Shown: piece after piece, positions 13,301 to 41,655 of the stretch | Position numbering within the stretch: position 1 is the stretch's first letter | Layout of the letters: every line of letters begins with the position of its first letter | DNA from: Hyphochytrium catenoides | Lineage: Eukaryota > Protista > Hyphochytriomycota | Assembly (NCBI GenBank): GCA_900088475.1 | Contig: FLMG01003751.1 | Span: 1 to 41,655 of the forward strand | Direction: 5' to 3' | DNA: 41,655 bases | Notes under the pieces: model-generated | The model's input: the letters and a program-made list of their open reading frames with translations, nothing else | Databases searched by the model: none | What the model was told of the DNA's origin: nothing | Program-made: the position numbers and the translations under genes

Positions 13301-14526
13301 CTCCGTCCGCCCATGGCAAGTGTGGCGTTCGTCCACTCAAGCCATCCCCTTGAACGTGGTCGCTACTTGGGATATGCTGTCCAGTAAAGAGACTAACAAG
13401 TGATTAGTATCTATGTAGGGTCTATCCCCTTCCTCTCTCTTTCTATTAGTACTAAAAATGTCTCAACAATGCAGATAGTGTCGGGTCAGCGCTGTGTCCT
13501 ACTTCCCACGGCCGTTGCCCTTGGAAGAAGCCCATCATCATCACCTGCTGCTGCGCTCTACTACTACTGCTGAGCGCAGTACGGGATGTTTGCGTCCTCC
13601 TCCCACTGATACTCATCAATGATGAACAAGAAGACATGAACAGAGATCCAAGTGCTGGCCTCCAAACTCAATGACATGCTGCTTTTTAACAGGAGTCATC
13701 TGCTTCTTCCTTGCAGTAGTTACTGGTTCATCACTTAGAAACGCCTATCTTTTGTTGTTTGGTTGTGAGGAGGAGAGTCCGTTCATCAAAAGTGCCACTT
13801 GCCGCTTGTTGAAGGTGCGCTTGACCTTGATGAGTAACACTTGGGAACACCCGCCTTTGAAGGCTGTCAGGTACGGGGCAAATAAGAGAGACAGAGTGAG
13901 GTAGAGGTGTGAAACAGAGTGAGGTGGGGCAGATCAAGCAGAATAGATAATGGTGGAACAGGTGAGATAGTTCTGGTCAAGGTAGAATAAACCTAGGAAG
14001 ATAGTCAGAGTAAGAAACGGAGAGACAGAGCGCATAGTTATGAGAAAGTGTTTTGGCAAAGAGACAGAGGAGCAAGAGGGAGAAAAAAGCGGCAGCAACA
14101 AGAAAAGAAGGTCAACAAGGGTTCTTGAGCACAGAGAAAAGACAAGGAACCTTCGTCTTATGCAAGCAGCACCCACCCGCCCCGCGGGACGGACGGAGAG
14201 GTGGATGTATGAGTAATAATAAGGGCTTTCCTCATCCTAGACTCCACCCACCCCGCTTTGTGGTTTGTTGTGGTCTTCTACAGGTACACTCGGATATTGC
14301 CTCATTCCGAATAGGAACGCTAATGCTACCACTCTTTACTGTACTGTAGGAACCTTGGGTACTTCATTACGCTATATTCTGGATGTGTATAAAGTAGGCA
14401 TCACTGGCTCTCCCACCCCACCCGCCCTTNNNNNNNNNNNNNNNNNNNNNNNNNNNNNNNNNNNNNNNNNNNNNNNNNNNNNNNNNNNNNNNNNNNNNNN
14501 NNNNNNNNNNNNNNNNNNNNNNNNNN

Positions 14527-15341: not shown

Positions 15342-18272
15342 ATGGAGGCCTCTCAATCTTCGTCCTCAGGCATTGACATTGGTGCCCCTGGTGGGGTGGA
15401 GAAGCTGATTTACACGATGCGGTGTAAGCTGGACATCCGCGATCGGCATCATAAGAGAAGAACAGTAGAATCGGTATTTATTGGCAGTGAAGCTGTGGGG
15501 TTTCTCATGAAGTGCGGCGCTTCGCGGACGAGAGAGGACGCCGTAAGATTAATGCAACAGCTTGTCAAAAAGGGCTATGTACAATGTATAGAAAAAGAGA
15601 CAGAGTTCAAGGTAGGTACATCTCTAAGTCTCTCTCTCTCTATCTTCCATTCATTTTCTCTCTTCTCTCCTTCTATGTTGCCGACTATCATCGTGTTATT
15701 CTATCATTGGAAACCTCCACTGGTGGCCACTGACACGCCTGTACCTGGTCCTCGTTTAGGATTCCTCCAACCTCTATCGGTTCTACGACGATGAGGATCA
15801 TTCCTTTGACCCGCGGAGCCGCAGACGGCCCAGCAATGGCTGCAAAGTTCAGCTAGACCGCCGCTCACTATCCAACAGCAGCAGGGGCAGTAGGTGGTTC
15901 TTCTCTCCACACACCGCACATAACTCCATCATCATGCCCTTTGAAGTCTCCGAACATCTTCAACGCTGCTGCAACGACTCTTCAGATCCCACGGAACAGA
16001 TGAAGGCGGTAGAGAAGATTCGGAAGGCGATTGTGAAGGAAGTGCATGTGCGAGCGGGCAACTGGGTCCTGACGAAGGAAAATAAGAGCGCGAGCCAAGG
16101 GCGGCAGGTGCAGGTCTATCGGCGAAAGGTGGACGGAAACTTTCAGATCTGCAAGACAGTAGGAAGGATCAATGTGCCTCCAAGAGAGTTCGTGATGGGC
16201 TTCATTGACTTTGAAAGGAGAAAGAACTGGGAGGCTCTCTTTGACACAGGTTACATCGTAGAGTCGATTCCTGGTATCACCCCCATCTTCCCCTTCACTG
16301 ATCCAGCACAGCTGGACCCCAAGGAAGCCAAAGATGTTATAGGCTTTGAGACTAGCGCGAGGATTATTTATAGGACCACCAGGACGCCTTCTGGCCTCTT
16401 CGCCCCCAGGGATGTCTGCAGCTTCCAAGACTGCTTCATGACTCAGGATGGTACCTACGTGGTCTACGAGATCTCTGTTATCCATAAAGATGTACCCACA
16501 AGCTGCAAGGGATATGTTCGAGGGGAAGTCTTCGCTCTCGTTCACTGTGCACAACCCTTAGCTGATGACCCCAGTTCCTCTAAGCTGATCCTTATTACCC
16601 AGTTTGATTCCAAGGGCAAACTGCCAGCCTGGCTGGCAGATATGGTCATCGACTCTCTCCAGCTACGGAACTTTGAAGAGCTCAAGGCTCTTCGCATCCC
16701 TGAGGAGCTGAAGGACGTTCCTTTGGATAAGGCACTGACAGATGACACGACAACGGGAGTCGGTATCGCAGACTTTGAGCTCTTGACGGTGCTAGGGCGC
16801 GGTGGCTTTGGTAAGGTCCTCCAGGTCCGCCACAGGAAGACAGGGGAGATCTATGCCATGAAGGTGCTTACCAAGTCCGAGCTTGTGGCGAAGCAGCAGG
16901 TGGAGAGGACGCAGGTGGAACGAAGTATTCTTGCCGCGGTGCATCACCCCTTCATAGTACAGCTTGCATATGCTTTCCAGTCCGAGCTGAAGCTCTACAT
17001 GGTGATGGAGTTCGCCCAAGGTGGAGACTTCTTCTCACTAATCAGAGTGCAGGGCCGCATACCAGAGGACAGAGCAAAGATCTACATCGCTGAAATTGCT
17101 CTCGCCCTTGACCATCTGCACTCTCTGGACGTTGTTTACAGAGATCTGAAGCCTGAGAATGTCCTTCTAGCCGCTGATGGCCACGTAAAGCTCACAGATT
17201 TTGGTCTTTCCCATCTTTTCGAGCCCACCTCTGAGGCACCGAACCCAAATATGTCTGATCCTGGCCCAGCCAGCCAAGTTACCTACTCTTTCTGTGGAAC
17301 CGAGCGGTACATGGCCCCTGAGATGCTGCTGCAGTTGGGACACGGGAAGGGCGTAGACTGGTGGTGTCTAGGTGTACTGGCCTGCGAGATAATGACGACA
17401 AGACATCCCTTTGACGCGTCCAACCACTTCCAAACTCTTAGGAACATTGTCTCTCAAGAGCCGAATATTCAAGGCACGCTGAGTGAAAAGGCTGTCTCAC
17501 TCATCCACTGTTTATTGAGGAGGACCGTCAATGATCGTCTCTGTTGCAGCAAGGGCTTGGTGGAGCTGAAGGCGCATCCGTTCTTTGAAGGACTAAGCTT
17601 TGACGAGGTAACCCTGGTGCCCTTCCCCTTGGCACTTTTCCCCTTTCTTGCGGTCCTTGATCAGTGTGCCACCTCTTCAGCTCCCTCTTTCCCATCGGCG
17701 CTCTTCCCTAACGATAAAATTTCTCAAAGACCTCTATCCTCAGTGGCTGTCTCTCCTCTACTTACTGAGTAAATAGCTGTCTTAGCGAGTCTCGGGGCTA
17801 GTACACGAGCGTTGTTTCCTGTTTCTCACATTCCTAGTCCTGCCCTCAGGCTTCTCTGATTTTCCTCGATTTGGGCTCTCTTCCTCTGTTTGGTGGCTCT
17901 AACGCTCACTTTTTGATCATTCCAAAGGTCCTGGCCAAGAAGATTCAGATGGACTACGTACCGAAGGTCAAGAACTCTATGGATGTCAGCAACTTTGAAG
18001 AGGTCTTCACCCGACAGGATATAGAGGAAAGCATTGCAGAGAGAAAGCCACCCTCTGCAGGCAGCTCGCAGAGCAGCCTGGACGACGGGAATGAGCGGAG
18101 GATGTTCAATTTCTTCACTGGCTGGATAGGCAGCGGCTCACAACGAGGCAGCAGCCTGACCGGCGTGGATTCGGATGGGCATGGCCAGCAAGCTTCTGAC
18201 ACTCAGAATCCGCGCCTTGTCAACTTCTCATACATGGCCCCGTTCCCGTCGAAGAAGCTGGTAGAGGAGTAA
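15342..18272 (+). CDS. AGC-family Ser/Thr kinase with N-terminal DEP and START domains, 3 exons (15342-15611, 15760-17607, 17928-18272), about 820 aa
   Basis: DEP: IRDRHHKRRTVESVFIGSEAVGFL..TREDAVRLMQQLVKKGYV..FKDSSNLYRF. START: FERRKNWEALFD, APRDVC, HKDVP..GYVRGE, DSKGKLPAWL. Kinase: LGRGGFGKV, YAMKVL, YRDLKPEN, DFG, SFCGTERYMAPE. AGC tail: YVPKV..DVSNFEEVFT..NFSY. The exon lengths sum to a multiple of 3. Confidence 0.92.
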
Positions 18273-18721: not shown

Positions 18722-18840
18722 CACTCTCTCTCTCTCTGTCTCTCTCTCTCTCTCTCTCTNNNNNNNNNNNNNNNNNNNNNNNNNNNNNNNNNTCTCTCTC
18801 TCTCTCTCTCTCTCTCACTCTCTCTCTCCTCTCTCACACA
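18722..18840. repeat. (CT)n microsatellite spanning N gap 18760-18792
   Basis: Directly visible. Confidence 0.95.
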
Positions 18841-21593: not shown

Positions 21594-23716
21594 TTCTGGC
21601 CCTGCCCTCCTTCCAGAGTGTGGCATCAAACATCGCGCTAGGAACAGCCGAGCAGGTGCGGCTCTACGTGGACGAATACTGGGCTATCCGCTTTCTTCTT
21701 GGATGGTACTCCTTGCAGGTAAGCCCGAAATAGAGGAGAAGGGGCCGGGAGACGGAAGGTGGTTGAGAGATGCCTATCATTTTAGACAGAGCAGAAGGAG
21801 AAGCACAAAGTGAGAGTGAAGAATCAAGAGACGAATAGAGGAAGAGAGAATGGGAACAGGTGGAGCAAGATAGCTGCGAGGTTGACTCCAATTAGACAAA
21901 CTCTTCTCTGTCTTTACGTCTGGGAGGAGAGAAGAGCAAGCGATATGCTTGTCCGTGTCTGGGTGGGGAAAGGGGATATACCTTGCGTGCTGTGCCTGTA
22001 AAGAGAACTGAGAGAGAGAGAGAAGAGAGAGAGAAAGAAAGAAAGAGAGACCAAGACGGAGCGAGAGAGACAGAGAGAGACAGAGAGGGAGAGGAGAAAG
22101 AGAGAGAGACAGAGAGAGACTGAGAGAGACAGATAGAGAGACATTGAGAGAGAGAGAAAGAGAGCGAGAGAACGAGGAGAAGTTTATGCCAAAGGAGCTA
22201 ACCCGAACTCTTCTTATCGTTCTTGCCACTAGCTGCTGGCCAAGACCTTAATCGGTTTGATAAGAGGGGAGTACACTGCGAACCTTCATGGTGAGCCTAC
22301 TTCTTCCCCCTCCACAGGCTGCTCCGCTCTGTATAGCACCTGGTGTGGGACCTCCTTGCAGGTCTCATGGTCAGTTCTTGCCTGTCTAGCTCTCTGCTTT
22401 AGGAGAGAGGAGGTAAGGGGCCAAGGTATCTGTGTCTGTCCGTGATCTATTCTCCCGGCCTTCTTTTTTCTTTCTCGCACGCATCTTTCTATTCCTTTCC
22501 CTTATTCTTCTCTTTGGCCCACGCTTATTCCTTGTCTCCGTGGCTGATCCCCACTTTCTGTTCCTCTTGGAAGTCACGGGAGAGCCAGGTTCGCTTGGTC
22601 CTCAGATATATGTTGGCGCTTCATAGAATTGTGGAGATTGGGTGGTTCATTGTAAGAAGCTCGCCCCTTTCTGTCTAGTTCTTCTCTCTCCTCTCTCTCT
22701 GCAAATTCCTCCTCTCTTTTCTCTTCTTGTTCCCTCTTTGCTGACCTGTTCCTCACTCCCCTCTGCAATCCCGCCATTCTTCTTATAAAGTATCATCTCT
22801 CTGTATGGATTCACTCTACTTTCTTGTCCTTCTTTGTCTCTAACTAAATTTCACGCAGTGGGGGAACATTGTAGCCTTTTACTACGGAGCTCCTTGCAGA
22901 GACACCAACGCGATCGAGTACTACTTCTCTCTCGTCATCCTCAGTCTTCTCTACTTGCGGATCTTAGTGATGGCCTCAGAGAAAGCAACAGCCGCTCTGC
23001 TTTACCCGCTCACCCTGGCGGCCGCACCTCATGTTGTCAGGACCTTTAGCGCCGTCGTCAGACAACCCTCAACCTCTGAGAGGCCAGAAGGGGCTCAAGG
23101 GGCCATCCTCGCCTTGCCTGTATACCAGTTCGAAGGCGATAAGACTCTACTGCCTGATGTGAGTTCTTTGGCCGTTCACTCGTCGTCTGGCTTTCTCTTA
23201 AGCTCTTTTTATTCACGTGTACCACGCGCTTGGCTATGTATCCACATACCTCGCCTCATACTCAGGGTGAGGATGCTTATCTCAACGGTGCTCAATAACT
23301 GCCTCGTCTTCAGCTTACATCGGTATTTATTGCTTGGTCCGACTGACAGCGTCCCACGCTCCACCCTTGATCTCTTGTCGCAGAACGACCCTTCTTGTCC
23401 TGTCTGCCTAGCGGCTTATGAACCAGGAAGCGCGATTAGGATCTTGCCATGCCGTCATCACTTCTGTCTCCAATGCATCGACCACTGGCTCGTCCTTAAA
23501 CCCTCGTGTCCTGTGTGCCGTAGCTCGTTGACTGGAGAGCCCGAGCGACAAGAGCCTCAAAGTCCAGGACAAAGCAGATCTCAACCACCACCGTCAGGGG
23601 AGACAATAGCTGGACGAGAGACTGTTATTCCTGCTGGAGGTAGTGCTACTGCACCAGTGATAGCCGAAGGCGGTGGATCTCAGAATGCTCAGGCAGTGAT
23701 GCCCCTGCCGGAGTGA
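21139..23716 (+). CDS. Multi-pass transmembrane RING-type E3 ubiquitin ligase, about 7 exons
   Basis: Exons give hydrophobic segments (YWAIRFLLGWYSLQ; IVEIGWFIWGNIVAFYYGAPC..YYFSLVILSLLYL), then AILALPVYQF and the RING CPVCLAAYEPGSAIRILPCRHHFCLQCIDHWLVLKPSCPVCR. The start codon and 5' exons are less certain. Confidence 0.8.
22010..22170. repeat. Intronic (GA)n-rich microsatellite
   Basis: Directly visible inside an intron of the RING gene. Confidence 0.9.
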
Positions 23717-25238: not shown

Positions 25239-28200
25239 ATGAAGGAGCTGCCTGGGCCCTGCAGGCGCTGTGGCGGTAGGGGCCATGGGCTACTAATCCC
25301 TAAGAGTGATGTTTGCGCGCATTGCGCCAGGTAAAAGGCCAGACTATAAGGAGTCGGTGATAATTGAGCTCATCAAGTGTCTACTGCACCGCAGGCAGCT
25401 AAAGCTCTTCTTCAATCCAGACGAAGATGAATACTGCAGGGACCAGGGGTATACAGATATCAGCCCCTATGCAGATGGCAAACTCCTGAAGAAGGTTGGT
25501 GGAGACTTCGTTTTAGAGAGTTACTTTCATTCCAGACATTTCTGGAACTCCATCCTAGCTCGTCTGCCCTTGACTAAGGATCTCTTGCGTTATCTAGGGC
25601 CTTTGCTATCCATCTAGTTGTAGCACTCGCTCTTAACTATCGCCCACTAAGTGGGGCAGGCCCATCTCGCTCGGTACTCATTAACTGCTGCAGGTGATCA
25701 GAGAAGCGTCTCCTGGCATTGACTTGATTACAGAGGGATGTCCTACCTTTGGTAAGTGCAACGGCAGTGACGGTAGTCCTTATAAATCTATCGACGTCTA
25801 ACAGACGCACTTCTGACTCTTTTCTGTGCTGATTCGTATACTTTTGCAATGCAGTCCAGTATGTTGGTCGGCTGACAGATGGTTCCATCTTTGACACCAC
25901 GTAAGCCCAATGAGGGGTTGCACTCACCCTTCAAGCGTTGAGTAAGCTGAGACGCTCACCGCCGTTCTCTTCGATTGCGCCATTGTCCTCTTCCCTTATC
26001 TTCCTAGCCGAGATGTGGTGGATGGGAAGCACGTAGGAGGCACAGATGATGAGTTTGAGTTCCAATTAGGACGAGGTGAGGAGTGCCAACAGCCATCACT
26101 ACGTCATTGGGTTTGCCAGCTTGCGCGCCCTTCGTACTCCCGCTCTCTCTCATGACGCCTGTCGTGCCGCCATATTCTTTCTCTTAGTGTGGGTTCCTCT
26201 TCTCAGTGGGATGCCCGTCGTGCAGTTCCTTATAGGCCGCAACTTGAAGCTGGTATCTAACTAACTCAGGCGTATTCCTCAGGGAAAGTCATCAAAGGTT
26301 TTGACCTAGGCGTGGCTACCATGAAAAGGGTACGACGAGAGACAGTTAGGCTAAAGGCTAAAATCGCAGATCAGGAGTGTCCAGCGTGACAAGAGAGAGA
26401 AATTGTGCGAGTAGCGGCTCACTAGTATTCATATTGTAGGGAGAAGTTGCACGGTTCATTATCCACCCGGAGTATGCCTACGGGAAAGAGGGATTCGCGC
26501 CCAAGGTAAGAATGACGAAGCTCCGGGCCGGCAGGGAGAAAGGAAATACACACCTCAACCGAGAAGAGGAGGAGAGATTGTGAGCATAAGGGAAAAGAGA
26601 GGATATGGGCTGACCAGGAAAAGGGAGCGCTCACATAGGTCTTTGGAGGAAGGAGGGACCTAAAGTTAGGACGGGCGACGAAGGACCATGGCAGATAGCC
26701 GAAGCTCTTCTAGCCGGAAGAAGCGATGCAGAAGTTCAAAGGAGGGATAAAGATCGAAAGAGAGAGAGGACAACAGAATATTGTTCCAGATTATGCGAAA
26801 AGCCATTCAAAGTCGCAATGAAAGGCGGCCTCAAACTATTCTCCTGCCACTGCGTTGCAGGTCTTTCCTGACGCTACGCTGGACTTTGAGATCGAGCTTG
26901 TCTCGTTCAATGTAATCCTCACCCCTCACTAGCTTTTCACTGTCGCTAGCCTGCACTTATGCGGCGGGTTGCCTCTTCTCTCTCGCCTGGCTCTTGTCTC
27001 TAGGACCCTCTACCGCGTTTTCCCTCTAAAGCTGAGATGGAGGAGGCAAAGAAAAAGAGGGAAGCTGAGCTAATGGAGATGGTAGAAAAAGACCCGCCTT
27101 TGCCTATAGGTCAGTTATCCTCCCTCTCGTTGTTCTCATCCCGTGTTAGAAGGGTCCCTAAGAAGAGGATCTCAGAGGAAAGGATTCGAAGGTCGAATGA
27201 AGAGAAGGAGAAGGGAAACCAACTATTTGCACAGGGCAAGCTGGAAGAAGCGAAGAAGCAGTATGATATGGTAGGTTGGCCCAGGCGCTCTCGGCTCTTC
27301 ACCCCTCCTAGCAGGTCGAGGCTTGTTTATCATGTCACTGGCGCCTTCACCTCGTCTTTTACCTTCTCTCGCTCTCCTCCCCTGGTAGTTGGAACGATCT
27401 GCTTTCCCTCGATCTGCCTTTGCCCGTTTGCTGATGCTGACTCGTAGGCGTTTGTGAACATCTTTATTGTGAAAGAAGAGTGGGAGCAAGTGCTGACAGA
27501 GGATGAGAGACAGAAGATCAGTATGCAGAAGGTAACATGGGTGTAGAAGTATGATCTGCTCCTGTTATGAGCTGGCACAAGCAACAGCTTTCTTCCATAT
27601 CAACAGTTTTTCCTCCTTGCTTTCCCTCTCGATCGCTTCTGGTCTGAGTCAACATCTTATTCTGGCGTCCAGGTCCCACTCCATCTTAATCGTGGCCTCG
27701 TCAAGCTTAAACTGGGAAAGGTGGACGATGCTCTGTGGGAGTTTGACCAGGTACCTTGCGTCTCAGAAGCTCGCGCTTCTGCGGGGACCTTCTTCTGTTC
27801 TTCACGACTGTTCAGCCTCATCCTTTATCCTTGAGCATTCGAGGTCATGCGGGTAGGAGAGAGAGAGATTGGTGTATCGTAGGTGTTCTTTGCACTTTCC
27901 TCTCTCTTCTGTTTCCGAGGACCATCTTCTCTCCCTCTCTAAGCCTCTCTATCTCTCGCTTTTCTTCTCTTTTTCACGTGACCCTCATCCTGCGTCAGCA
28001 TCTCTCTCCCTCCCCATTCTCCCGCAGTGCAGTTCTCGGTATTCTCCTGATGATCTTTTGCAGGCATTAAGCATAGATCCTGAAAACGTCAANNNNNNNN
28101 NNNNNNNNNNNNNNNNNNNNNNNNNNNNNNNNNNNNNNNNNNNNNCATTTACAGGCTTGCTAAAGAGAGATCTAGAGAAGGAAGAACTAAAAGAGTACTG

Positions 28201-29001: not shown

Positions 29002-30816
29002 CTAACTGTCTAGTAAGTAGTTGGCGGTAAGCGTCTCGTTTCTGCCGCAAGCTCTGTACGCCTCCACCACCAAGTCACGGTCGAAGCCCAAGGCTGTCAG
29101 CTGTCAGAGAAGAGGTTAATCACTAATCTATTGAACACAATCCTCTCCTGTCAAATCTCCTGAAGCCTTTCTAAAACCCTAGTCTCCCCCCGGCATATCC
29201 ACCGAGCCTTCCCTGTCATTGCTCTAGCTCAGTATGTCCCTTGAGTCCGTCTCCATGATGCCAGACAAAGCTGTGCACTCTAATCTGCTGTGGGTCGATC
29301 TCTAGGCTTGGTGAAGCTTCTCTGCACCCTTACTCCCTTTTCGACTTACCCTACTTATTGCTTCCTCATCTTGTGCGGTCAGTGGCGCATCGTCCTGTTC
29401 TCCTCCGCCTGACTCCTGGAAGGCATAGTCCTCGTCATCATCATGCTCGTCGTCTTCCTCGTCCATTCCTTCAAGGTCTTCATCTTCGAGGTCGTCCAAA
29501 ATCATTCCTAAGACCTCCTCGACTGTCGCGCTGCAAAGTCAAGGAAGAATATCAGAGAAACAAACCTAATAAAAAGGCAAGAAGACGAAGATGGACAGCA
29601 GAGAGAGAGAACCGGAACTAACAAAGTCCTGGAAACGGGGTAGAGCTCCATAAAGGAAGACACAGCTGCTCGGAGGGCGAAGAAGTGGAAGACATAATGT
29701 GAGGTTTCTGCTCCTCTTTGCACCTTGGCTGCATGCGGGTGGGTGTGGGCTCATTTAGCAGCCGTACAAAGTCCTCAGAATGCTCATTGATGTACGCTAA
29801 CAGCTCAGGGTTACGTCGGCCGATGATCTCGAGGACATTCTCTAGCAGGGCAGGATTTGCTTGCACAAGGGCTCTTAGCTGCAGAGGGTGGCCGGTTAAG
29901 AATGCCAGAATGTAAGCGATCATATGATACAGAGGCAGGATAGGCCGAGAGAAGCGAGGGAGCAGAGACAGTGAGACATATAAGAGGAAAGAAAGGCAAT
30001 TACAGAGACAGGGATGTCAGCGGCGGAGACTCACTACGTCCCTCTCACTTCCTTGCGCTGACCTGATTGAACTGCGGGTGGCTCCTTAAAAATGTCGGGT
30101 CAAAGTCTGCATCTTGGTGACTGTCATCATAGGTTGCATAGTCGCTGCCAGGCCCCGTGGTTAGGCTTCCATAGGTGGAGCGATCGCTGCGTTGGTCATG
30201 TCCCTCATCCATTAGAAACTCGAGTGCCATTTGCCGATTGTTTCCAGACGCCTCGAGAGCTATTCTGCAGCTTTCTTCACTAAAGCCCATACTTACAAGT
30301 TGCTGCAGCGCGTCCACGTTAGCTTGTGAGGCGGCATTAGCGGCACCAACAGGAGCAGCAGGCGCAGCAGCAGGTGCAGCCGAGGCAGAGGGCAAAGGAG
30401 CTATCGAAGGAATCGCTGAAGCTGCTGGTGATGCCTTAGGCTGATCTTCCGCCTTCGCAGCCTTTGGCTTGAGAGAGAGGAGTGAGATCATGTGCCGAAA
30501 GAAGTGATAAGCAAGAAGGAAGCAGCAGACCTTGATGACCATGCAGACAATGAAGTCTGAGGGCTTGATATTGCATTCTTTGACGGTCACGGTGTCCTCC
30601 AGGATCTTTCCGACATGAATTATCTTTTGCGAGGCCGCAGAGATCTTCTCCTGATCTTCAATGACCTTCTTCAGCTCACTAACCTGCGACGCGGACCACA
30701 TCCTTAGCAGTATCCCTGGTCTACGTAACTCCAGAAATCCTGCTCCTTACCTGCATCTCAGGATCTACGTCTACCGTGAACGCCCTCCCAGAAGTAGTTT
30801 TCACCGTGAGCTTCAT
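29002..30816 (-). CDS. RAD23: UV excision repair / ubiquitin receptor RAD23 (UBL-UBA-XPC-binding-UBA), 6 exons
   Basis: MKLTVKT..QKIIHVGKILED (UBL); LQQLVSMGFSEE (UBA1); FLRSHPQFNQLRALVQANPALL (XPC-binding); [39 protein letters not shown] (UBA2). Confidence 0.95.
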
Positions 30817-32233: not shown

Positions 32234-35200
32234 CTACTCCTCGGCAGCTGCGTCTTCTTCTATGCTTTCAGGTCCCTGTCCTCCCTCGCTCTGCTCTCTT
32301 TCTCCTCCTGACTGCAGCTCTGCTGCCTCCTCTCCAACGCGGTCAACGAGGGCTGTAGCATCATGGTCTACTTCTCCAGCACCCCACAAGCCGCTGGGCT
32401 CTTCTTCAGGAGTGGTTGCATCCTGGACTGCCTCTTCAGCATAGTCAACTTCAGCTGGTGCCTCTTGCGCGCTCTCATCTGGCGTATAGTCTACCTCTTC
32501 TACTGCATACTCTTCCCGCATCTCCGGTTCTTCTTCCCCGCTCACAATGTCCTGCTTGTGCTCCAGGCCGTTTCCTTCATCGATGGCTGCAGTGAGCTCG
32601 CCACTGACATCATCGATCGATTGCCGTAGCTCAGCTGGAGAAACAGCGACCTCATGGTGCTGGCGCTCTACGATGGTGACAGCAGTCTCCTTCGCACGCT
32701 TTTCTGCCTTCTTGCTGAACTTCTTGCCTGAAAGCTTCACGCCTGACGTCATGTTGGACATGCTAGGGCTGCCGGAGGAATTAGCAGGGCTAGGGGCTGC
32801 ACCCCAGCCACCTGCGTCAGAAGAAGCAGGAGGCGCACCCCATCCTCCTCCATCCGCAGTGGTAACCTTAGGAGTGCCCCAAGAGCCAGCTTGTTCTTCA
32901 GATGGGGCAGCAGGTGCAGCCTCTCCCCAGCCACTGGAGGGAGCATTTGTGGCTACCCCTTTACTGCTCTTCTTGCTATTTTTCTTGCCTTCGTTTTCGG
33001 TGTCTGCTTCTGGAACTAAGTTGCTCTCTTTCTTTCCTTTCTTTTGCTGTTTCTTTGCCTTGCCTTGCCTCCGGCTGTCATCACCACCCGTCACACTGTT
33101 ACTTGCTTCATCTGAAGTCTTGCCCTCTTCAGGAACGCCCGTCTCCTCGGCCGCTGTGGTTCCTTGACGCCCTGTAGCTCCCCAACCGCCACTGTTGGCT
33201 TCAGGCTCAGGAATTCCCCAGCCTGCATCTTCTTTAGGCTTAGGAGCGTCCCAACCTGCATCTTCTTTGGGCTTAGGAGCCCCCCAGCCTGCATCTTCTT
33301 TGGGCTTAGGAGCTCCCCAGCCTGCATCTTCCTTAGGCTTAGGAGCCCCCCAGCCCGCATCCTCTTTAGGCTTAGGAGTGCCCCAGCCTGCATCTTCCTT
33401 GGGATTTGCTACTCCCCAACCCGCGTCTTCCTTAGGCTTAGCAACACCCCAGCCTGAATCGCTCTTTCCACCTGCGGTCTCTGATATTACAGCTGCTCCA
33501 GATTCACCGTCAGCATCAGGCTTGCTCTTCCCCTTTCCTTTTGGCTTCTTGGGCCCCTCATCCCATCCATTGTCCTCACCCTTAGCTTGCTGCTTTGGTC
33601 CCTTCTTTGATTTACCAGCTGGAGCTGGAGGTTGGGCCCAGCCTGAGTCTTGGGTTGCGGCAGGAACGCCCCAGCCGCTGTCTTTAGCCTGAGGAGCGCC
33701 GTTGTTCCCCCAGCCACTTCCCTCCTGATTGTCGTAGCCGTTCTCACCTCCTTTTCTCTTACTTTTCTTAGTGTTCTTGTCTAATGATTGACTCAGAGAA
33801 GTGCGCTGTTCCGAGGACCACGAGCTGACAGGGTTATTTCAGCGGGAAGTGCAGCGTAGCAAGGAGAAGAGAAGCAAACATGGTCAGTGAATGAGCTAAT
33901 GCAAAAGTTGCGGCTCTGTAGGTGCCATATGGCAGAAGTTTAGCCAGCCCAGCACCTGATTGAGTACTCTGTCTAGGTACCGCAGGCATACAAAATGAAA
34001 TGAAGAATACAGTCGATGGCGGACATTTATAGGTGATCGACAAGGTGGACAGATAGTAGCAAATAGAGAAGGCAAAGCCCAGTGCTGCCTACCTATCTGT
34101 GCTCTTCTTGCCCCAAGAGCCCTGCTGCTTGAGCTTTGCAATGCCGAAGACTTGAGGTTCTTGAGAAGGAGGTGGAAGAGGAGGAGGTGCACTTTTCCCG
34201 GATCGCGGCGTTTCACCCCTATAAGACCCAGGACCTGGCCGTGTGCCGAGTAGCCCTTTCTTCCCTCGTGGAGGCTCATAGTCATAGTCCTCTACTTCCT
34301 CTTCCAGCCCACGAGAGTGTGGCCGCCCAGGGCCTTTCTTCCCCCGACGCGGAGTAGTGTAGTCGTCTACATCTTCGTATCCGGTTCCACCGCGCGGGAA
34401 AGTATGAGAGGCCCCTTTCCTCCCCCTTCCCATAGAGCCTGTACTGTAGCTATCTATTTCTTCATCAATATACGCATCACTGGTTCTTCTGATAGGTCCG
34501 CCCTGTGGACCAGCAGGCTTCTTATTTGAGCTGGAGGCAAGGAGAAAGAGTTAGGTGGTCGCAAGCTATCTATCACTTCCCCATCTTGCTTTCTGACACT
34601 ATATTCTGTTCCTCGACAAGTGCCCCAAAGCATTCCAAAGTTCGCTCTCTCTCTACCACCTTCTCTTCAAGTCAAACATGCACGTGGGCCTCTCAATGAA
34701 ATCAATGCAGCCATACTCCATAGCAACCCTAGAATGCCTGTCTGTCATGGTGTTCCCACCGTCATTGTGACATACAAGGAGCTCCTGGATCCTGCTATGG
34801 CTTCGTACTCATCCACAGCTAAAGCAGGGATGGGCGTAGGAAGTACTGTCACCATCCGTCCTTCCGATTCTTGTGAGACCTGTACTTTGAGGTTGAGGTT
34901 CAGGATATCTCCTAACTCATCATCGCTGGCCCTGAGCGCAAAGGTATTGGATGATAAAGAGAGAAAGAGTGAACACTTAGAGAAAGCATAAAGGAGCCAA
35001 TGCGAAGGTGTAGCAATTAGGTCTAATGAGAACCTAAATAAGCGACAGTGCCAAGGCATGGACACAGATACCAGGGCAGAGAGAGATACATAGTGGTAGG
35101 CAGCGTAGCACGCGGTAGTTAGGGTTCTTACTCGTCATCTAAAAATGGCCGGGCTGAACCGAGAGGTCCTCGATTTCTTGCTAGTTTATGCTTCATCGGG

Positions 35201-35586
35201 GGTGGATGCATGCTCGGCGGGGTTGGCCCTCCATGGGCTTGATCCCCATACTCAGAAGCGTCATAAGGCATCTCACGATAGTCTCCCTGACTTGCGAGCT
35301 GATGGCTTTCATACTGAGTACGATGATGTACTAGAGGATATCTGCCGGGGTACACGGCGGGAGGAGCAGGACTGCCTGGGCCATGAGGAACCCCCAACGA
35401 CTGAGACTGTGGAGGGTGGGCGTACCCCATCGTGTGCCCTTGATAGACGGGATTATATGGAGCACCAGGCTGATAAGAAGAATGAGCCATGCCTGGATAG
35501 ACAGTGCTGGGGTACTCCTCTCTAACATAGCCAGGTGGGACGTACATAGGAGCCTCCGGGGAGAACTCAAACTGGTCCTGCTGCAT
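32234..35586 (-). CDS. Largely disordered GW/WG-repeat protein of about 900 aa with N-terminal PAM2-like motif (candidate Argonaute-hook protein)
   Basis: Exons 35586-35132, 34931-34776, 34728-34660 (possibly optional), 34530-34093 and 33824-32234 join in phase with GT-AG borders (2709 nt). The last exon is a 1.6-kb open frame carrying most of the GWG motifs and an acidic C-terminus. Confidence 0.8.
33197..33460 (-). repeat. Coding tandem repeat, 8 x 33 bp, consensus peptide DAGWGAPKPKE
   Basis: Units DSGWGVAKPKE, DAGWGVANPKE, DAGWGTPKPKE, 3x DAGWGAPKPKE, DAGWDAPKPKE, DAGWGIPEPEA. Many differences between units fall at third codon positions in this frame. Confidence 0.95.
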
Positions 35587-36340
35587 CTTTCTACCCGGTG
35601 CTCTCCTGCCTGCAAGCCGCACCCCGCAGAAATGGCTACAAGGCTGCCACCTGCAAACCCCTATTCGTAGGAGGATTAACGACTTGCAGATACCACTACT
35701 CGAGTGGCGATAGATCCGATGTGTCTCCCACACCAAGCCTTCCTCCCAACGAACTCAATATCAGGGTCATCGGGCTCTTGAAGCCTGACTTCGTCTGCAA
35801 AAATCTTCGTTGAAGTCTCCATCAGATGCTGATCTGTGGCCAGGAAGTCCTCACAGCTGCGTATTACTACCAGCATGTATGGCATAGAGGCGCCTAACAA
35901 CTGGCGGCTGGTCATTATTAATGCACTTTTTGCCGCCATATCTCGCTCGTTCTTATTTGTATATGATAATCAGTTAGGGGTAACTATTAACTCAGTCTCT
36001 GGCTGATCCTGAATCATTCTGCCGTGGTTGGGATTCTGAAGCTCTCCCAATAGCCGCGAAGTTGCGCTGTTATTCCCTTGGCGCCAAAGCTCTGACTGAT
36101 GGCAATGTCAGAGCTTGTGGGCCCTCCTCAGTCTATCTTGAGCCATATCTGTTCTTGGTGTTCGTGCATGTGCCATAGTTTTATTGGTGTCCTAAGTCAG
36201 ACAGTCTGTTCTGTTTGCAGGGACCTCCGTGAGTGATATCATTGTGTTTATGGTTGGATCTCCTGTTTCATTCAACACAACCTTGTCCTGACTCCTTATC
36301 GCGAAGACCTCAAGGCAACTCTACTCCGTTGGCACTTATT

Positions 36341-38160
36341 ATGGCCTTCATGGCTTCACCATCATGCAAGTTTGTGCAGTCGTCGTTGAAGCGATTGGCT
36401 CTCCGTCGGCGCCCAGTTGGTCATCCTTTCGATAGGGTGAGACCTGGTGGCAGATTCTACACAACGACTCACTCAGCACTTGCCCGAGCTGCTGCATCTT
36501 CTACGGATGATAAAGGCTCCAGCCAGAAAACCCGCATGGGTGCCCTCGCCATTGCTGTCAAACAGATTGAGTCTACCTTTGGCAAGGGGTCTATCATGCG
36601 GTTGGGAGCGGATAGCGCTGTGCACGATATCGAGGTGAAGTTGATCACATTCTGGCTGCATCAACTAGTCTCAGTCAGACATGAACATCGGAAATCTGAT
36701 GACTGTGTCAATACTCTCTCAGGTCATCTCCACGGGCTCATTGAAGGTGGACATCGCCCTAGGCTGCGGAGGGCTTCCCAAGGGACGAGTGGTTGAGATC
36801 TATGGCCCTGAAAGCTCAGGAAAGACATCTCTTGCCCTTCATGTGATCAGTGAAGCGCAAAAGCTTGGAGGGAACTGCACCTTCATTGATGCTGAGCATT
36901 CTCTAGACCCTCAGTATGCTAGAGCACTAGGTGAGTCTTTTCCAGGGTTTCTCGACCTAGTGAGGCATGGACTCACTTACGATTCTAGGTATCAATCTTG
37001 ATGATCTCTATGTCTCTCAGCCTGACTCAGGCGAGCAGGCACTAGAGATCGCGGACACTTTGATCCGCTCCGGGGCAATGGACGTCATTGTCATCGACAG
37101 TGTGGCTGCTTTAGTTCCTAAAGCAGAACTTGAGGGAGATATGGGAGATGCGCATATGGCGCTGCAGGCGCGTCTCATGAGTCAGGTACCTTCTGGTCGT
37201 GCTATAAATGACCCTTGTGCCAAATGCTAGGGCTTCATATATCACCTCCCACCTAGCTCAACCTCTTTATGCCATGCTGAGAATCGGCTTCTAGCCTGTA
37301 ATCTGAGCCTTCAACGTTTTTTTCTCTCCCTCTCTCTCTCTCTGTTTCTCTCTTTCCCTCTGTCTCAGGCCCTTCGGAAGCTGACGGCATCTCTGTCCAA
37401 GTCGAACTGTCTGCTTATTTTCATCAATCAGATAAGGCAGAAAATTGGCGTTATTTTTGGCAATCCAGAGGTCACCGCGGGCGGCACAGCGCTCCGGTAA
37501 CATGCCCCTTCGGGTTCCCAGCACGGAATGAATTGTTGACCTGTTCTATATTTATCTAGGTTCTATGCCTCCGTACGCATGGAGGTGAGGAAGAAGGGTC
37601 CCATCAAGCAGGGAGATGTGGTAGTAGGAAATGAGACGCGGGTGAAAGTTACCAAGAACAAGCTGGGGCCCCCATTCAAAGAAGCAGAATTTGACCTCAT
37701 CTTTGGGGAGGGGATCAGCAGGCCCGGAGAGCTCTTAGATCTTGGTGTGGAGGTTAGTCGCGGGCTGTTACTTCGTGGCCCTTTTCTGCCTTGCTCTCTT
37801 TGCACCTCGTCTCGTTGCTTGTCTGATTCTTTAAGGTTTGCAGCAGAATAGAAACGTAGCCCTCATGCTCCGACGTCACTGAGGCGCTTCTCTGCCGTAC
37901 AGACTGGGCTGGTTAAGAAGAGTGGGGCCTGGTACAGCTTTAATTCTCCGTTGACAGAGGAAGTGACTGTCGGAGAGAACTTCGCGCAGGGGAAGGAGAA
38001 AGCGAAGGCATATCTTCGGGAGAACCCAGAGCTGGCAAGAAGTCTGGAGATGGCCATACGAGAGGCAATGAAGAAACAAAGCAACCCACCGCCAGCAGAG
38101 AGTGAAGAGACGACAGAAAACGTGGATGACCCTGAAGCTGCAAACCCAGGCACCGCATAG
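36341..38160 (+). CDS. recA: Nuclear-encoded organellar (probably mitochondrial) RecA, 6 exons
   Basis: [42 protein letters not shown] (Walker A), [55 protein letters not shown]. The N-terminal extension is R/S/A-rich and acid-poor, like a mitochondrial presequence. Confidence 0.96.
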
Positions 38161-38231: not shown

Positions 38232-40627
38232 TCAGCTGACTCTTCGGATCAGTTCATCTGTGTCACGCTGAAAGTTGTCGACGCATTGTAAGAGGGAGGA
38301 CAAGAAATCGCCGTTCCCTTCAGGTACCAGAGGGCGTAGACGGACTGGAGAGACCTGTAAAGCGCCACAGGTGGCCGTTTTAGAGGCAGAATAAGAGTGA
38401 GAGAGAGAAGAGACCAGAGAGAGCCACGTAGGAAGATTATATTGAGTGGCGTGAGCGGAAGACGGAAGGATGGTGCGCCGATTCGGGTGATCTTTCAGCC
38501 AAAGATGAGCTCTCACGAAGTTTGTCTCCTACCTCCTTTCTTCTCTGCTGAAGCTCTTCGATCTCCACCTTGTGGATTCTCTTAACATAGTCCATCTCTC
38601 TCTGGTGTCTGCTCTTGCAGCTGCGCAGCTCTCTTTCTAGCTTCTCCAGGCGAGAAGCCTGTGAATGGATGACGCCCTCTAGCTCCTTCAGTGGATAAGT
38701 TGAGGAAGAAACAGTCAGTCACGCTAACCCATCTTCAGTGTGGCAAATACTCTCTAAATGAAGCAGTAGTTCTCCATCATTCGGTGTCTGCTCTCCTCTC
38801 TCTCCCAATCTTACCGCTATGTAGCTCTGAAGTTTCTGCTTCTCTGCCTTTTCCTCTGCAAACTCCTTTGACATATTCTCCAACACCATCTCTATGGCTC
38901 TCTCCCCACGGCGGTGCTGCTGACTGAGGAGAGTGCGGTCTAGAGAGGACGCGAGGGAGGCTTGTGAGCAGCTGTCACATTTTTCCTCTGGTTGGTCTTT
39001 CTCTCTCCCGTCAGGAGTAGGATTCACTGTGTTTTGCCTCTCCCTTTGGCTGAGACTATTTCGGCCTGAGGCTCTGGTGCTCGCTTCCTCATCTTTTTGC
39101 TTGGGTTTCTATAGAGAGAGAGCATGAGACACGCATAAAGAGTGGTCAATGTACAGTCCTTAGAGAGGACAAGTAGCAGAGAAGGGTTACTCGTACCGCC
39201 TGACGAGCTTGAAGGAAAGAGGGAGATGGGACCGGAGCAATGCCCTGAGAGGCAATAGACGGATCTCTCCTGAGCTGAGGACGAGGAGCCTTTCGTATCG
39301 GAATGCGCGACTTCGCGCCAACATCGATGTCCATCGGGGCAGGCCCCTCAGCTCTCACTTGACTCCTTGACTCATTCTTCCTAGTCTATTTTTGAGAAAA
39401 AGAGTAGGGGAACACTGCTTTATAAACGATGCGGACGCACGGAGTGAGAGAAGGATGCCTATGACAGAGAAGGCCGAGTAGGAAGCCTATGAGAGAGAAG
39501 GCCGAGTGACAGGAAGGACAAGGAGAAGTTAGAGAAAACGAGAGAGAGAGTTGGCCAGTACCAGGTGGATCGGTAGTGGTGCCAGTGGACCATCGCCAGG
39601 CAGAGTGTCAAAGGGTTCTCTGAAGTCCTAGTAAAGGAGGTCACTCGTCAGAAGCAGTGCACAAATCGTTTTTCTCCTGCGCACTCTGGCCACTCTACGG
39701 CCTCTCCTCTCCCTGTTGGTCTCTGTCTGTCTGTCCCTCTGTCAGTGTGTCTATCTCTCTATCTCTTTCTCTCCCTCTCCCTCTCCCCTTCCGGGTACTC
39801 TCTCTCCCTTCTGGCATTCTCCCTCTCTCTTCCGGCACTCGTCTAGGTATATAGCTATAGAAATGCTCTCGCCAACATCTTTCACTTCCATCTTGGTCTA
39901 TTGCTATCGCCGGCAGTCTCTCTCTCTCTCTCAGGTACCTGTCTCTCTATCATGTCCTCCAGCAGCGCGCAGTAGTTCAGAATGTTCCGCAGCCAGATGA
40001 CATTCGTCGTCGGCACCTCCAGCTTCTGCAGCCATTTCTGCAGGCGGATCCTGAAGAGTCAGAAGACAGATTGCGTGTGGGGAAGCATTGTTCGTTCAGA
40101 GTCGATCTTCTCCCCTCTCCCGGTGACTCATACTCAGGTTTCAGACTTTCTTTTCTATCGGGCTTCAATCTTCTCTCTCATCTCTCTCTTCTTTGTCACT
40201 CATTTCCAGCCAACCTTGACAGCTTTTTCGTTTCTATCCCTCTCGCTCTCTGTCTCTCTGTCTTTCTCTCCGTCTCTGTCTCTCTCTCAGTCTCTCTCTC
40301 TCTCTCTTTCTCTTTCTGCAGTCTGTCGGTAGCTTAGTCCTTCACACCAGATGTCTCTCTGTCTCCTCTCAGTAGCTTATCTCTTCTCAAGCATCCCAGG
40401 CTGTCTGACCTGACATGCTTGGAGCTTACCAGCCTCAGGCTGTCTCTTAACGCCGCCAACCTGGTCTCAGCTTGGTCGATAAGCTGGGCGGGCGAAGGGG
40501 AATAAGAAGGCGCATTTTCACCCTGCGACCCTTCAGGAGGCAGAAGTGAGAGATATGCTCTGACCGGCGTTGAGGGCAAGCCTGATTGACAACCTCTCTC
40601 TCTCTCCCTGACATCAGTGCCAGTCAT
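38232..40627 (-). CDS. DUF4485-domain coiled-coil protein (CEP112-like N-terminus)
   Basis: Spliced HVRIRLQKWLQKLEVPTTNVIWLRNILNYCALLEDMIERQ|DFREPFDTLPGDGPLAPLPIHL fits the DUF4485 pattern, followed by coiled-coil exons (ELEGVIHSQASRLEKLERELRSCK..HKVEIEELQQ). The start and one middle splice junction near 39110-39200 are unresolved. Confidence 0.7.
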
Positions 40628-40774
40628 GTTTCGCACGGCAAGCAGCCGTCGCCTTAGCTGCCCAAGCTCCCAGGAAGGCAATCCATCATCATGTCAGCAG
40701 CCGAGGTTATTGACAAATGAAGAAAGGAGAAAAATCGAGTCCCATTTATCTCCATCATGACCTTTCTCTTTTCT

Positions 40775-40870
40775 TCTTGTCTCCCTCCTCTCTCTCTCTC
40801 TCTCTCTCTCTCCCTCTCTCTCTCTCACTCACACACACACTCTCACTCTATTTTCTCTCTCTCTCCCTTC
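40775..40870. repeat. (CT)n/(CA)n microsatellite
   Basis: Directly visible. Confidence 0.9.
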
Positions 40871-41579
40871 TCCCATAACTCTCTACAAACCGGGATACCC
40901 GACTGAGTTACCCATGCAACCCAGGTGGTTGGGCGGCAATCACTCAGCCATAATAATACGCAGACAGTATCTTCAACATCAGGTCTATCGCTTTAAATGT
41001 ATCTAGTAATAGTTCTTGGCGGGACGGGCAGGAACGTGCAAGTTTTTGAAAAGTGGTGACAGTTAGAGANNNNNNNNNNNNNNNNNNNNNNNNNNNNNNN
41101 NNNNNNNNGAGAGAGAGAGGAGAGAGAGAGAGAGAAAAAAGAGAACACAAGCAGAAGAAGAGAAGGGAAGGAGGATGAGGAGATAGTAGTAGAACTAGTA
41201 GAGAGGGTTGGCAGACAGGCAGGGTGGTGAGAAGAGAGAGACAGAGCATGGAGAGATAAAGAAAGAGAGGGAGAGAGGAGAAACGAAGAGGGAGAGGAGA
41301 GGTTTTCGAAGGGAAAGTGCACTTGGGGATGGGGCACCAAAAAGATCTTTCTGCACTTCGAAGAGTTCTGAACTGCCCCGACGCCCGACTGACTCTCAGC
41401 TCGCGCAGTCAGCAATCTCTCTCTCTCTGTCTAAGTGCCTCAAACTCTCTCTTTCTCTCTTTCTCTCTTTCTGCTACTTGTTTACGCTCTTTCACTTTTG
41501 CACTCAAGAACCGGCAACGGCACGAGTTCCGAGCTATTATCTTCACTCCTCTGTTTCTGTGTCTCTCTTTCTCAGCCTT

Positions 41580-41580
41580 T

Positions 41581-41621
<41 letters not shown>

Positions 41622-41625
41622 GTCT
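41580..41625. repeat. (CT)n microsatellite
   Basis: Directly visible. Confidence 0.9.
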
Positions 41626-41655
41626 AAACCCACCCTAAGTCTCCCCTTCTTATCT

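What the first reader, a model, noticed from the sequence alone, without database searches (positions are those of the whole stretch)
32234..35586. Candidate GW182-like silencing scaffold in a non-animal: about 19 GW/WG motifs plus PAM2-like and PPGY motifs
Seen: the spliced ~900-aa protein has no recognisable enzyme domain but about 19 Trp residues in GW/WG context (SWG, GWG, GWD, GWA, LWG) in a disordered G/S/D/K/P background, and it begins MQQDQFEFSPEAPMYVPPGY. Established: GW/WG Ago hooks bind Argonaute (GW182/TNRC6, S. pombe Tas3, plant NRPE1 and SPT5L), and GW182 couples them to a PAM2 motif that binds PABP. GW182 is regarded as animal-specific. Inference: this could be an independently evolved Argonaute-to-poly(A) machinery adaptor with reversed motif order, implying a miRNA/siRNA translational-repression or deadenylation route in this protist. 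The supplied ORF track fragments this gene and does not show the GW array in its coding frame.
Basis: partly seen in the sequence, partly recalled or inferred. Interest (0 to 1): 0.8.

Follow-up and report, generated by a model that had tools for sequence, protein, structure and literature searches.

The report
Orphan GW-repeat disordered protein, likely Argonaute hook
A three-exon gene in a soil stramenopile encodes an 827-residue, fully disordered protein in which 19 of 20 tryptophans sit next to glycine, which fits an Argonaute-docking platform, but no binding, expression or orthologue evidence could be obtained and its likeness to animal GW182 is only an analogy.

Summary
On the minus strand, three exons (35586-35132, 34530-34093, 33824-32234) join in frame through GT-AG introns.

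- **Trp pattern:** The protein has no Cys and no Pfam domain. It has 20 Trp, 19 of them in GW/WG context, against a mean of 5.2 and a maximum of 14 in 20,000 shuffles.
- **Repeat array:** Eight tandem 11-aa units (PKEDAGWGxPK) differ at the DNA level mostly in third codon positions, so the peptide is under selection.
- **Composition score:** A re-implemented published WG/GW score gives 85 and 51 half-bits for the two main GW domains. The published threshold is 7, and human TNRC6A-C score 90-107.
- **Spacing:** Trp spacing of 11 fits the rule of ten or more residues between Trp in TNRC6 Argonaute sites.
- **Disorder:** AlphaFold2 predicts disorder.
- **N-terminal motifs:** Residues 6-17 meet five of seven specified PAM2 positions. 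They have Tyr at the invariant Phe position and do not hit Pfam PAM2. PPGY alone is within chance (11-36% of shuffles).
- **Relatives:** None were found in any search. There is no UBA or RRM domain, so it is not a GW182 family member.
- **Untested:** Expression, and whether the genome encodes Argonaute or PABP.

Verdict: a probable lineage-specific Ago-hook protein (confidence about 0.45). GW182-like coupling to PABP is possible but weakly supported. The scan also noted a different GW182-like candidate elsewhere in this genome.

The parts
35132..35586 (-). Exon 1 (residues 1-151 plus 2 nt): Tyr/Pro/Gln/His-rich disordered N-terminus
   Evidence: First in-frame ATG after a stop; donor GA|GTAAG. 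Codon-usage score is best in this frame. AF2 finds no secondary structure, pTM 0.12. No Pfam hit.
35536..35571 (-). PAM2-like motif, residues 6-17 (FEFSPEAPMYVP)
   Evidence: Fits the refined PAM2 definition at positions 3, 4, 5, 7 and 12, but not at 9 (Met) or 10 (Tyr for invariant Phe) (PMC2854688). Regex chance is 1.3% per shuffle. Pfam PF07145 is not hit at E<=10.
35527..35538 (-). PPGY, residues 17-20 (PPxY WW-ligand pattern and PPG-hydrophobic GYF-ligand pattern)
   Evidence: present once; chance is 11-15% as PPG-phi and 24-36% as PPxY. For the TNRC6 PPGL/GIGYF parallel see PMC10187677.
34531..35131 (-). Intron 1 (601 nt, GT..AG, phase 2)
   Evidence: Stops in the exon frame; codon-usage score <=0 in all frames.
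34093..34530 (-). Exon 2 (residues 152-297): mixed basic/acidic region with RG/PRGKKG and acidic-Tyr patches; first GW (W291) at its end
   Evidence: No Pfam hit.
33825..34092 (-). Intron 2 (268 nt, GT..AG, phase 2)
32234..33824 (-). Exon 3 (residues 298-827 plus stop), part of a 534-codon open frame
   Evidence: Strongest codon-usage score. No in-frame Met before residue 653, so the GW array needs upstream exons.
33215..33781 (-). Main GW domain, residues 313-501, 12 Trp
   Evidence: Re-implemented Karlowski dos score of 85 half-bits.
33206..33469 (-). Tandem array of 8 x 11 aa (PKEDAGWGxPK), residues 417-504; Trp every 11 residues
   Evidence: TRF finds a 33-bp period with 82% matches. Differences between copies by codon position are 52/36/123, and the Gly after Trp uses all four codons.
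32762..32995 (-). Second GW cluster, residues 575-652, 4 Trp (SSGWGE, GSWGT, GGGWGA, AGGWGA)
   Evidence: dos score of 50.7 half-bits.
32570..32713 (-). Only predicted secondary structure: two low-confidence helices, residues about 669-686 and 694-716
   Evidence: AF2 single sequence, pLDDT 51-68.
32237..32569 (-). Acidic C-terminal tail, residues 717-827, with two EVDY motifs and the last Trp (LWG, W778)
   Evidence: 48 Asp+Glu in residues 661-827.

Best explanation
This is a lineage-specific, intrinsically disordered GW-repeat protein of a stramenopile. It most likely acts as an Argonaute-docking platform (an 'Ago hook'). Its Trp side chains, each flanked by Gly and small or acidic residues and spaced 11-13 residues apart, would insert pairwise into the Trp-binding pockets on the PIWI domain of one or several guide-loaded Argonautes. 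The array grew by tandem duplication of an 11-aa unit, as plant NRPE1 and SPT5L platforms did. Shown here: the gene structure by sequence logic, the Trp/Gly pattern and its non-randomness, selection on the repeat peptide, disorder, a composition score in the range of proven Ago hooks, and the absence of homologues. Inferred: Argonaute binding itself, and what the protein recruits. The N-terminal PAM2-like and PPGY motifs may add PABP or GYF-domain partners, but this is weakly supported.
For: 19 of 20 Trp touch Gly, against a mean of 5.2 and a maximum of 14 in 20,000 shuffles. Of the 12 Trp outside the array, 11 touch Gly (P = 3e-6). The repeat copies differ mainly at third codon positions (123 against 52 and 36) while D-A-G-W-G is kept. 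The dos scores are 85 and 50.7 half-bits with the published matrix; the threshold is 6.99, TNRC6A/B/C score 92/107/90, and shuffles reach at most 47.5 (PMC2910046). Only 4 of 340 residues in 313-652 are L/I/M/Y/C/F/H, the residues disfavoured in Ago hooks. Trp spacing of 11 meets the rule of two Trp at least ten residues apart (PMC9262622). AF2 gives pLDDT 44.7 and 56.5 with almost no secondary structure. 15 of 20 Trp have Asp/Glu at -4..-2; an acidic patch matters for the plant SGS3-AGO1 GW contact (bioRxiv 10.1101/2025.10.18.683247). Oomycete relatives have Argonautes (PMC6284064). An unchecked scan note places an Argonaute gene elsewhere in this genome (s1-336216).
Against: There is no binding, expression or conservation evidence. 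No RNA run was listed. No orthologue was found in any search, so Trp retention across species could not be tested. Composition-based Ago-hook predictors are known to pass glycine-rich false positives (PMC2910046). My score is a re-implementation with a plant-derived matrix. Pro, Lys and Glu are commoner here than in the plant reference set. Five NLS-like basic clusters and the acidic tail are equally compatible with other roles. I did not verify that the genome encodes an Argonaute.
Confidence: 0.45

Rival explanations
1. The protein is a Trp-motif adaptor for other Trp-pocket proteins of mRNA decay (CCR4-NOT subunit CNOT9, PAN3), or a sticker-and-spacer scaffold of mRNP granules, and does not bind Argonaute. 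The Trp residues would then be effector-side motifs like those in the GW182 silencing domain.
For: It shows the same G/S-flanked Trp in disorder. The N-terminal PAM2-like motif is typical of deadenylation adaptors such as Tob and PAN3 (PMC2854688). The Tyr/Pro/Gln-rich N-terminus and RG patches are granule-like. GW182 Trp motifs do bind CCR4-NOT (PMC3553986).
Against: Known CNOT9 and PAN3 ligands use a few Trp, not a regular 11-residue array of 8. No 4E-binding, FDF or LIR motif is present. The PAM2 match is imperfect.
Confidence: 0.2
2. It is a lysine-rich nuclear or nucleolar low-complexity protein whose GW repeats have no dedicated pocket partner, for example a nucleic-acid or chromatin-associated filler protein. 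The PAM2-like and PPGY strings would be chance matches.
For: There are five NLS-like basic clusters and an alternating basic/acidic charge pattern. PPGY is expected by chance in 11-36% of shuffles, and the PAM2 regex in 1.3% of shuffles, found post hoc. Pfam PAM2 is not hit. The soil variants show 7 non-synonymous against 7 synonymous changes in residues 566-770, which suggests weak constraint outside the GW cores.
Against: The exclusive placement of Trp next to Gly, and its preservation through a diverged repeat, argue for a specific Trp-centred function. Every long eukaryotic GW array tested so far that I know of binds Argonaute or its effectors (my own knowledge).
Confidence: 0.25
3. The gene model is wrong: the N-terminal exon and the GW exon belong to different transcripts, or the locus is not expressed.
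For: No RNA evidence could be obtained. Intron 1 (601 nt) is long compared with the 208-nt mean reported for Hyphochytrium (PMC5795050), if that is the organism. Met185 in exon 2 could start a shorter product. The codon-usage signal for exons 1 and 2 is weak (0.08 and 0.11).
Against: The open frames are 206, 153 and 534 codons, with canonical GT-AG sites and matching phases. Exon 3 has no Met before residue 653. All three exons score best in the model frame and the introns do not. The third-position bias in the repeat shows translation-level selection.
Confidence: 0.08

Closest known systems
Animal GW182/TNRC6 (and the C. elegans analogues AIN-1/2)
   Same: A long disordered protein with many GW/WG Trp at spacing of ten or more residues. 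It has a PAM2-like string and a PPG-hydrophobic string, the three kinds of short motif that TNRC6 uses for Argonaute, PABP and GIGYF (PMC9262622, PMC3018788, PMC10187677). Its composition score is in the TNRC6 range.
   Different: There is no detectable homology and no UBA, Q-rich or RRM module. The motif order is reversed, with PAM2-like at the extreme N-terminus. The PAM2 has Tyr for the invariant Phe and fails Pfam PF07145. The motif is PPGY, not PPGL. GW182 homologues are reported only in animals (PMC4615383, PMC6155107).
Plant WG/GW Argonaute platforms (NRPE1 C-terminal domain, SPT5L/KTF1, SPT6L, SGS3 disordered region)
   Same: The platform is built from tandem short repeats in which little but the GW/WG and the overall composition is conserved. 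It is disordered, and acidic residues lie next to the Trp (PMC2910046; bioRxiv 10.1101/2025.10.18.683247).
   Different: Those platforms are appended to a folded, conserved protein (polymerase subunit, elongation factor, XS-domain protein). This protein has no folded module at all, and it is richer in Pro, Lys and Glu.
Other non-animal GW proteins that bind Argonaute (S. pombe Tas3, Tetrahymena Wag1/CnjB, Cryptococcus Gwo1/Gwc1) - from my own knowledge, not tested here
   Same: They are independently evolved, lineage-restricted GW-rich partners of Argonaute/Piwi.
   Different: There is no sequence relation. None is reported with a PAM2-like motif.
PAM2-bearing adaptors (Paip2, Tob, PAN3, eRF3, Ataxin-2, LARP4)
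   Same: A short N-terminal motif in disorder, with a hydrophobic residue, Ser/Asn, Pro, Ala and an aromatic-x-Pro at the right spacing (PMC2854688). The protein-language-model neighbours of exon 1 include plant Ataxin-2/PAM2 clusters at low score.
   Different: Tyr replaces the invariant Phe and Met replaces the preferred Glu. There is no Pfam hit.

Membership tests
GW182/TNRC6 family (homology) | Detectable sequence similarity to GW182 proteins | tested here: not met
   phmmer against 1.84 billion representatives gave only repeat-driven hits to unrelated GWG-repeat proteins. The PDB search gave none.
GW182/TNRC6 family (homology) | UBA-like domain and C-terminal RRM | tested here: not met
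   No Pfam family at E<=1 in any exon. AF2 shows no folded domain in exon 1 or exon 3. Exon 2 was not folded.
GW182/TNRC6 family (homology) | PAM2 and PPGL motifs inside a C-terminal silencing domain | tested here: inconclusive
   PAM2-like and PPGY strings exist, but at the N-terminus and in degenerate form.
WG/GW Argonaute-binding platform (functional class) | Multiple GW/WG Trp in a disordered region, beyond chance | tested here: met
   19 of 20 Trp, against a shuffle maximum of 14. pLDDT is 44.7.
WG/GW Argonaute-binding platform (functional class) | Composition like validated platforms (dos score above 6.99 half-bits) | tested here: met
   85 and 50.7 half-bits by my re-implementation of the PMC2910046 Table 1 method. 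The ics score was not computed because its matrix is in a supplement.
WG/GW Argonaute-binding platform (functional class) | Pairs of Trp separated by ten or more residues | tested here: met
   Spacings are 11 (seven times), 12, 13, 13, 16 and 12. The rule is from PMC9262622.
WG/GW Argonaute-binding platform (functional class) | Trp-dependent physical binding to an Argonaute PIWI domain | not testable with these tools
   Needs a pull-down or ITC, or a complex model with the cognate Argonaute, which I could not reach.
WG/GW Argonaute-binding platform (functional class) | An Argonaute encoded in the same genome | not tested
   There is only an unchecked scan note (s1-336216) and the presence of Argonautes in oomycetes (PMC6284064).
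PAM2 (MLLE ligand) | Hydrophobic at position 3, Asn/Ser at 4, Pro/Val/Thr at 5, Ala at 7, Pro at 12 | tested here: met
   F8, S9, P10, A12 and P17, checked against the PMC2854688 definition.
PAM2 (MLLE ligand) | Invariant Phe at position 10 (Trp in PAM2w); Glu preferred at 9 | tested here: not met
   Y15 and M14. Pfam PF07145 has no hit at E<=10.
GYF ligand (PPG-hydrophobic) / WW ligand (PPxY) | PPG followed by a hydrophobic residue other than Trp; or PPxY | tested here: inconclusive
   PPGY is present once, and 11-36% of shuffles also have such a string. Whether Tyr is accepted by Smy2-type GYF domains was not established.

The most novel reading that the evidence does not exclude
A convergently evolved GW182 analogue outside animals: one disordered protein that hooks Argonaute through its GW array and, through the N-terminal PAM2-like and PPGY motifs, contacts PABP and/or a GYF-4EHP-type repressor. 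This would give a stramenopile a small-RNA-guided route to translational repression or deadenylation.
Probability: 0.15. Interest if true: 0.75.

Novelty: new member of a known kind. Interest (0 to 1): 0.45.

Why it matters
GW182 and its link from Argonaute to the poly(A)/deadenylation machinery are regarded as an animal invention (PMC4615383, PMC6155107). My literature search found no paper linking an Ago hook or GW motif to oomycetes or stramenopiles. If this protein binds Argonaute, it would be the first such partner in that lineage. It would also be another case showing that Ago hooks arise repeatedly by duplication of short Trp units. If the N-terminal motif also binds PABP, it would show convergent assembly of the same three-motif logic as GW182. 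That would suggest mRNA-level, miRNA-like repression in a protist group where only siRNA-type silencing is documented. As it stands, this is a well-formed, testable candidate, not a demonstrated system.

Tried and rejected
- **RNA evidence:** No RNA run was listed. The 'any' search gave only DNA contig runs and soil or sediment metagenomes.
- **Read layout:** Laying the metagenome contigs gave only six 151-nt pieces at 96-98% identity, i.e. the same or a sister strain. The changes were 7 synonymous and 7 non-synonymous, and none touched a GW. This is too close to test conservation.
- **Orthologue searches:** The word-indexed search with exon 3 found none. Exhaustive phmmer gave 58 hits, all on the repeat (query 110-250). 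These were bacterial GWG-repeat secreted proteins, neuropeptide-like precursors and similar, and I rejected them as compositional. Two metagenome scans, with exon 3 and with exon 1, found none.
- **Protein atlas:** All scores were 0.69 or below, which are leads only.
- **PDB:** Only chance matches appeared, to a designed Kelch repeat and a lysozyme.
- **Alternative exon in intron 1:** A candidate around 34935-34880 was rejected, because its donor phase would put a stop at the start of exon 2.
- **Other motifs:** LIR, eIF4E-binding and FDF motifs are absent.
- **Organism:** The neighbouring kinase hits oomycetes and ochrophytes at only 42-51% identity, so no close genome is in the databases. 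Hyphochytrium catenoides is a guess from soil habitat, run dates and intron statistics (PMC5795050) and is not established.
- **Scan index:** A look-up by sequence found no paralogue.
Full report
**What is there**

On the minus strand between 35586 and 32234 there are three long open frames of 206, 153 and 534 codons. They join through canonical introns. Exon 1 runs 35586-35132 with donor GA|GTAAG. Exon 2 runs 34530-34093 with acceptor ..CCTCCAG| and donor AG|GTAGG. Exon 3 runs 33824-32234 with acceptor ..CTGTCAG| and a TAG stop. Both introns are phase 2.

The ATG at 35586 is the first in-frame ATG after a stop. Exon 3 has no in-frame Met before residue 653, so the GW array cannot be made without upstream exons.

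I built a codon-usage log-odds score trained on 1,783 codons of the window's other confident exons. It is highest in the model frame for each exon (0.08, 0.11, 0.28) and at most 0.01 in the introns and flanks. This is weak for exons 1 and 2 and clear for exon 3. No RNA run was listed, so splicing remains inferred.

**The observation**

The protein has no Cys and 20 Trp, all between residues 291 and 778. There are 16 GW, 16 WG and 13 GWG, and 19 of the 20 touch a Gly. Shuffling the protein gives a mean of 5.2 and a maximum of 14 in 20,000 trials.

Part of this comes from duplication. Residues 417-504 are eight tandem 11-aa units (PKEDAGWGxPK), which appear as a 33-bp repeat at 33216-33460 with 82% matches. 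The remaining 12 Trp still touch Gly 11 times (P = 3e-6).

The repeat copies have drifted at the DNA level mostly in third codon positions, with 123 differences against 52 and 36 at the other two. The Gly after Trp uses all four Gly codons. So the peptide is being preserved, not merely the DNA. This is also the best evidence that the frame is translated. It is the only GW-rich open frame in the window.

**No fold, no family, no relatives**

- None of the three exon translations hits Pfam at E<=1.
- AlphaFold2 without an alignment gives mean pLDDT 44.7 for exon 3. The only structure is two low-confidence helices at protein residues about 669-716.
- For exon 1 it gives pLDDT 56.5, pTM 0.12 and no secondary structure.
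- The word-indexed protein search found nothing.
- Exhaustive phmmer over 1.84 billion representatives returned 58 hits. All lie on the repeat and all are unrelated repeat proteins.
- Neither the protein itself nor its neighbours' exact products are in these collections.
- Two metagenome scans found no relative.
- Soil and sediment metagenomes hold six 151-nt pieces at 96-98% identity. Their 14 changes are half synonymous, and none touches a GW. They are too close to be informative.

The neighbouring DEP-START-AGC kinase is closest to oomycete and ochrophyte proteins at 42-51% identity. The organism is therefore a stramenopile without a close sequenced relative in the databases. Hyphochytrium catenoides is a plausible guess (soil habitat, run dates, intron-rich genome; PMC5795050) but is not established. 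The lack of orthologues therefore means 'could not be tested', not 'orphan proven'.

**Tests of the Ago-hook reading**

Published work defines Argonaute-binding WG/GW platforms by composition rather than alignment. Trp and Gly score highest, then Asn, Ser, Ala and Asp. Leu, Ile, Met, Tyr and Cys are strongly disfavoured (PMC2910046).

I re-implemented that paper's domain-extension score with its Table 1 matrix and its 8.6 half-bit drop-off.

| Region (residues) | Trp | dos score (half-bits) |
|---|---|---|
| 313-501 | 12 | 85.0 |
| 575-652 | 4 | 50.7 |
| 507-566 | 1 | 23.4 |
| 289-302 | 2 | 16.8 |
| Published significance threshold | - | 6.99 |
| Human TNRC6A / B / C (same paper) | - | 92 / 107 / 90 |
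| Shuffles of this protein (maximum) | - | 47.5 |

Only 4 of the 340 residues in 313-652 are L/I/M/Y/C/F/H. TNRC6 Argonaute-binding sites each need two Trp at least ten residues apart (PMC9262622). Here the spacing is 11 across the array and 12-16 in the second cluster. Asp or Glu lies at -4..-2 of 15 of the 20 Trp. A negative patch beside the GW motifs is required for the plant SGS3-AGO1 contact (bioRxiv 10.1101/2025.10.18.683247).

Three caveats apply. The matrix is plant-derived. The method is known to pass glycine-rich false positives (PMC2910046). I did not compute its second (ics) score.

**The N-terminal motifs**

The refined PAM2 definition has these requirements (PMC2854688):

- a hydrophobic residue at position 3 (Leu, occasionally Pro or Phe)
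- Asn or Ser at position 4
- Pro, Val or Thr at position 5
- invariant Ala at position 7
- Glu preferred at position 9
- invariant Phe at position 10
- Pro at position 12

Residues 6-17 (FEFSPEAPMYVP) satisfy positions 3, 4, 5, 7 and 12. They have Met at 9 and Tyr at 10. The LARP4 Trp variant shows that the pocket tolerates another aromatic residue (PMC7356810).

A regex of the motif matches once. It matches in 1.3% of shuffled proteins. Pfam's PAM2 model gives no hit even at E<=10. Protein-language-model neighbours of exon 1 include plant Ataxin-2/PAM2 clusters, but at scores (0.64-0.69) that are leads only.

PPGY (residues 17-20) can be read in two ways. It fits PPxY, and it fits PPG-hydrophobic, the GYF-domain ligand. 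Animal TNRC6 carries a conserved PPGL in its silencing domain that recruits GIGYF-4EHP (PMC10187677). However, such a string arises in 11-36% of shuffles. Both motifs together occur in 0.15% of shuffles, but the selection was post hoc.

**Mechanism**

The most likely reading (about 0.45) is a lineage-specific Ago hook. Pairs of Trp would insert into the PIWI pockets of one or more loaded Argonautes. The platform expanded by tandem duplication, as in plant NRPE1 and SPT5L.

What it brings to Argonaute is open. The rivals are:

- a Trp-motif adaptor for CCR4-NOT/PAN3, or a granule scaffold without Argonaute (0.2)
- a lysine-rich nuclear low-complexity protein with chance motifs (0.25); there are five NLS-like clusters
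- a wrong gene model (0.08)

The full GW182-analogue reading (Argonaute plus PABP and/or GYF) gets about 0.15.

**Comparison and membership**

It is not a GW182 family member. There is no homology, UBA or RRM, and GW182 homologues are reported only in animals (PMC4615383, PMC6155107).

It meets every feature of the functional class 'WG/GW Argonaute platform' that sequence alone can test. Actual binding and the presence of an Argonaute in the genome were not testable here. An unchecked scan note (s1-336216) mentions an Argonaute gene on another contig, and oomycetes have Argonautes (PMC6284064). Another scan note (s1-331107) reports a different GW182-like candidate elsewhere in the same genome, so GW-rich candidates may be several.

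In the literature I searched, no paper links Ago hooks or GW motifs with oomycetes or stramenopiles.

**Verdict**

I class it as a new member of a known kind. Interest is moderate (0.45).

Noticed in passing
window 36233-38157 (+): A multi-exon RecA-like gene is transcribed divergently from the GW gene, with about 650 bp between the two starts. Exon translations carry RecA motifs, and an N-terminal extension suggests organelle targeting. Pfam RecA hits the first exon only weakly (E = 5e-4, below the cut-off).
   Followed up: partly
window 29300-30746 (-): A Rad23-like gene (ubiquitin domain plus UBA domains) lies downstream of the GW gene.
   Followed up: partly
window 15934-17772 (+): A START plus AGC-kinase open frame. 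Its best relatives are oomycete DEP-START-kinase proteins at about 42% identity and ochrophyte proteins at 45-51%. This places the organism among the stramenopiles and agrees with scan note s1-333928.
   Followed up: partly
window 9012-10325 (-) and 22955-23716 (+): A VTC-domain open frame of 437 aa and a RING-finger open frame.
   Followed up: no
window 39600-41655: Long CT/TC-type microsatellite tracts that translate as SLSLSL runs in several frames. Assembly gaps (runs of N) lie at 14430-14526, 18760-18792, 28093-28145 and 41070-41108.
   Followed up: no
window 32377-33058: Soil and sediment metagenomes from 2025 hold 151-nt contigs 96-98% identical to exon 3, so the organism or a sister strain is present in those soils.
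   Followed up: partly
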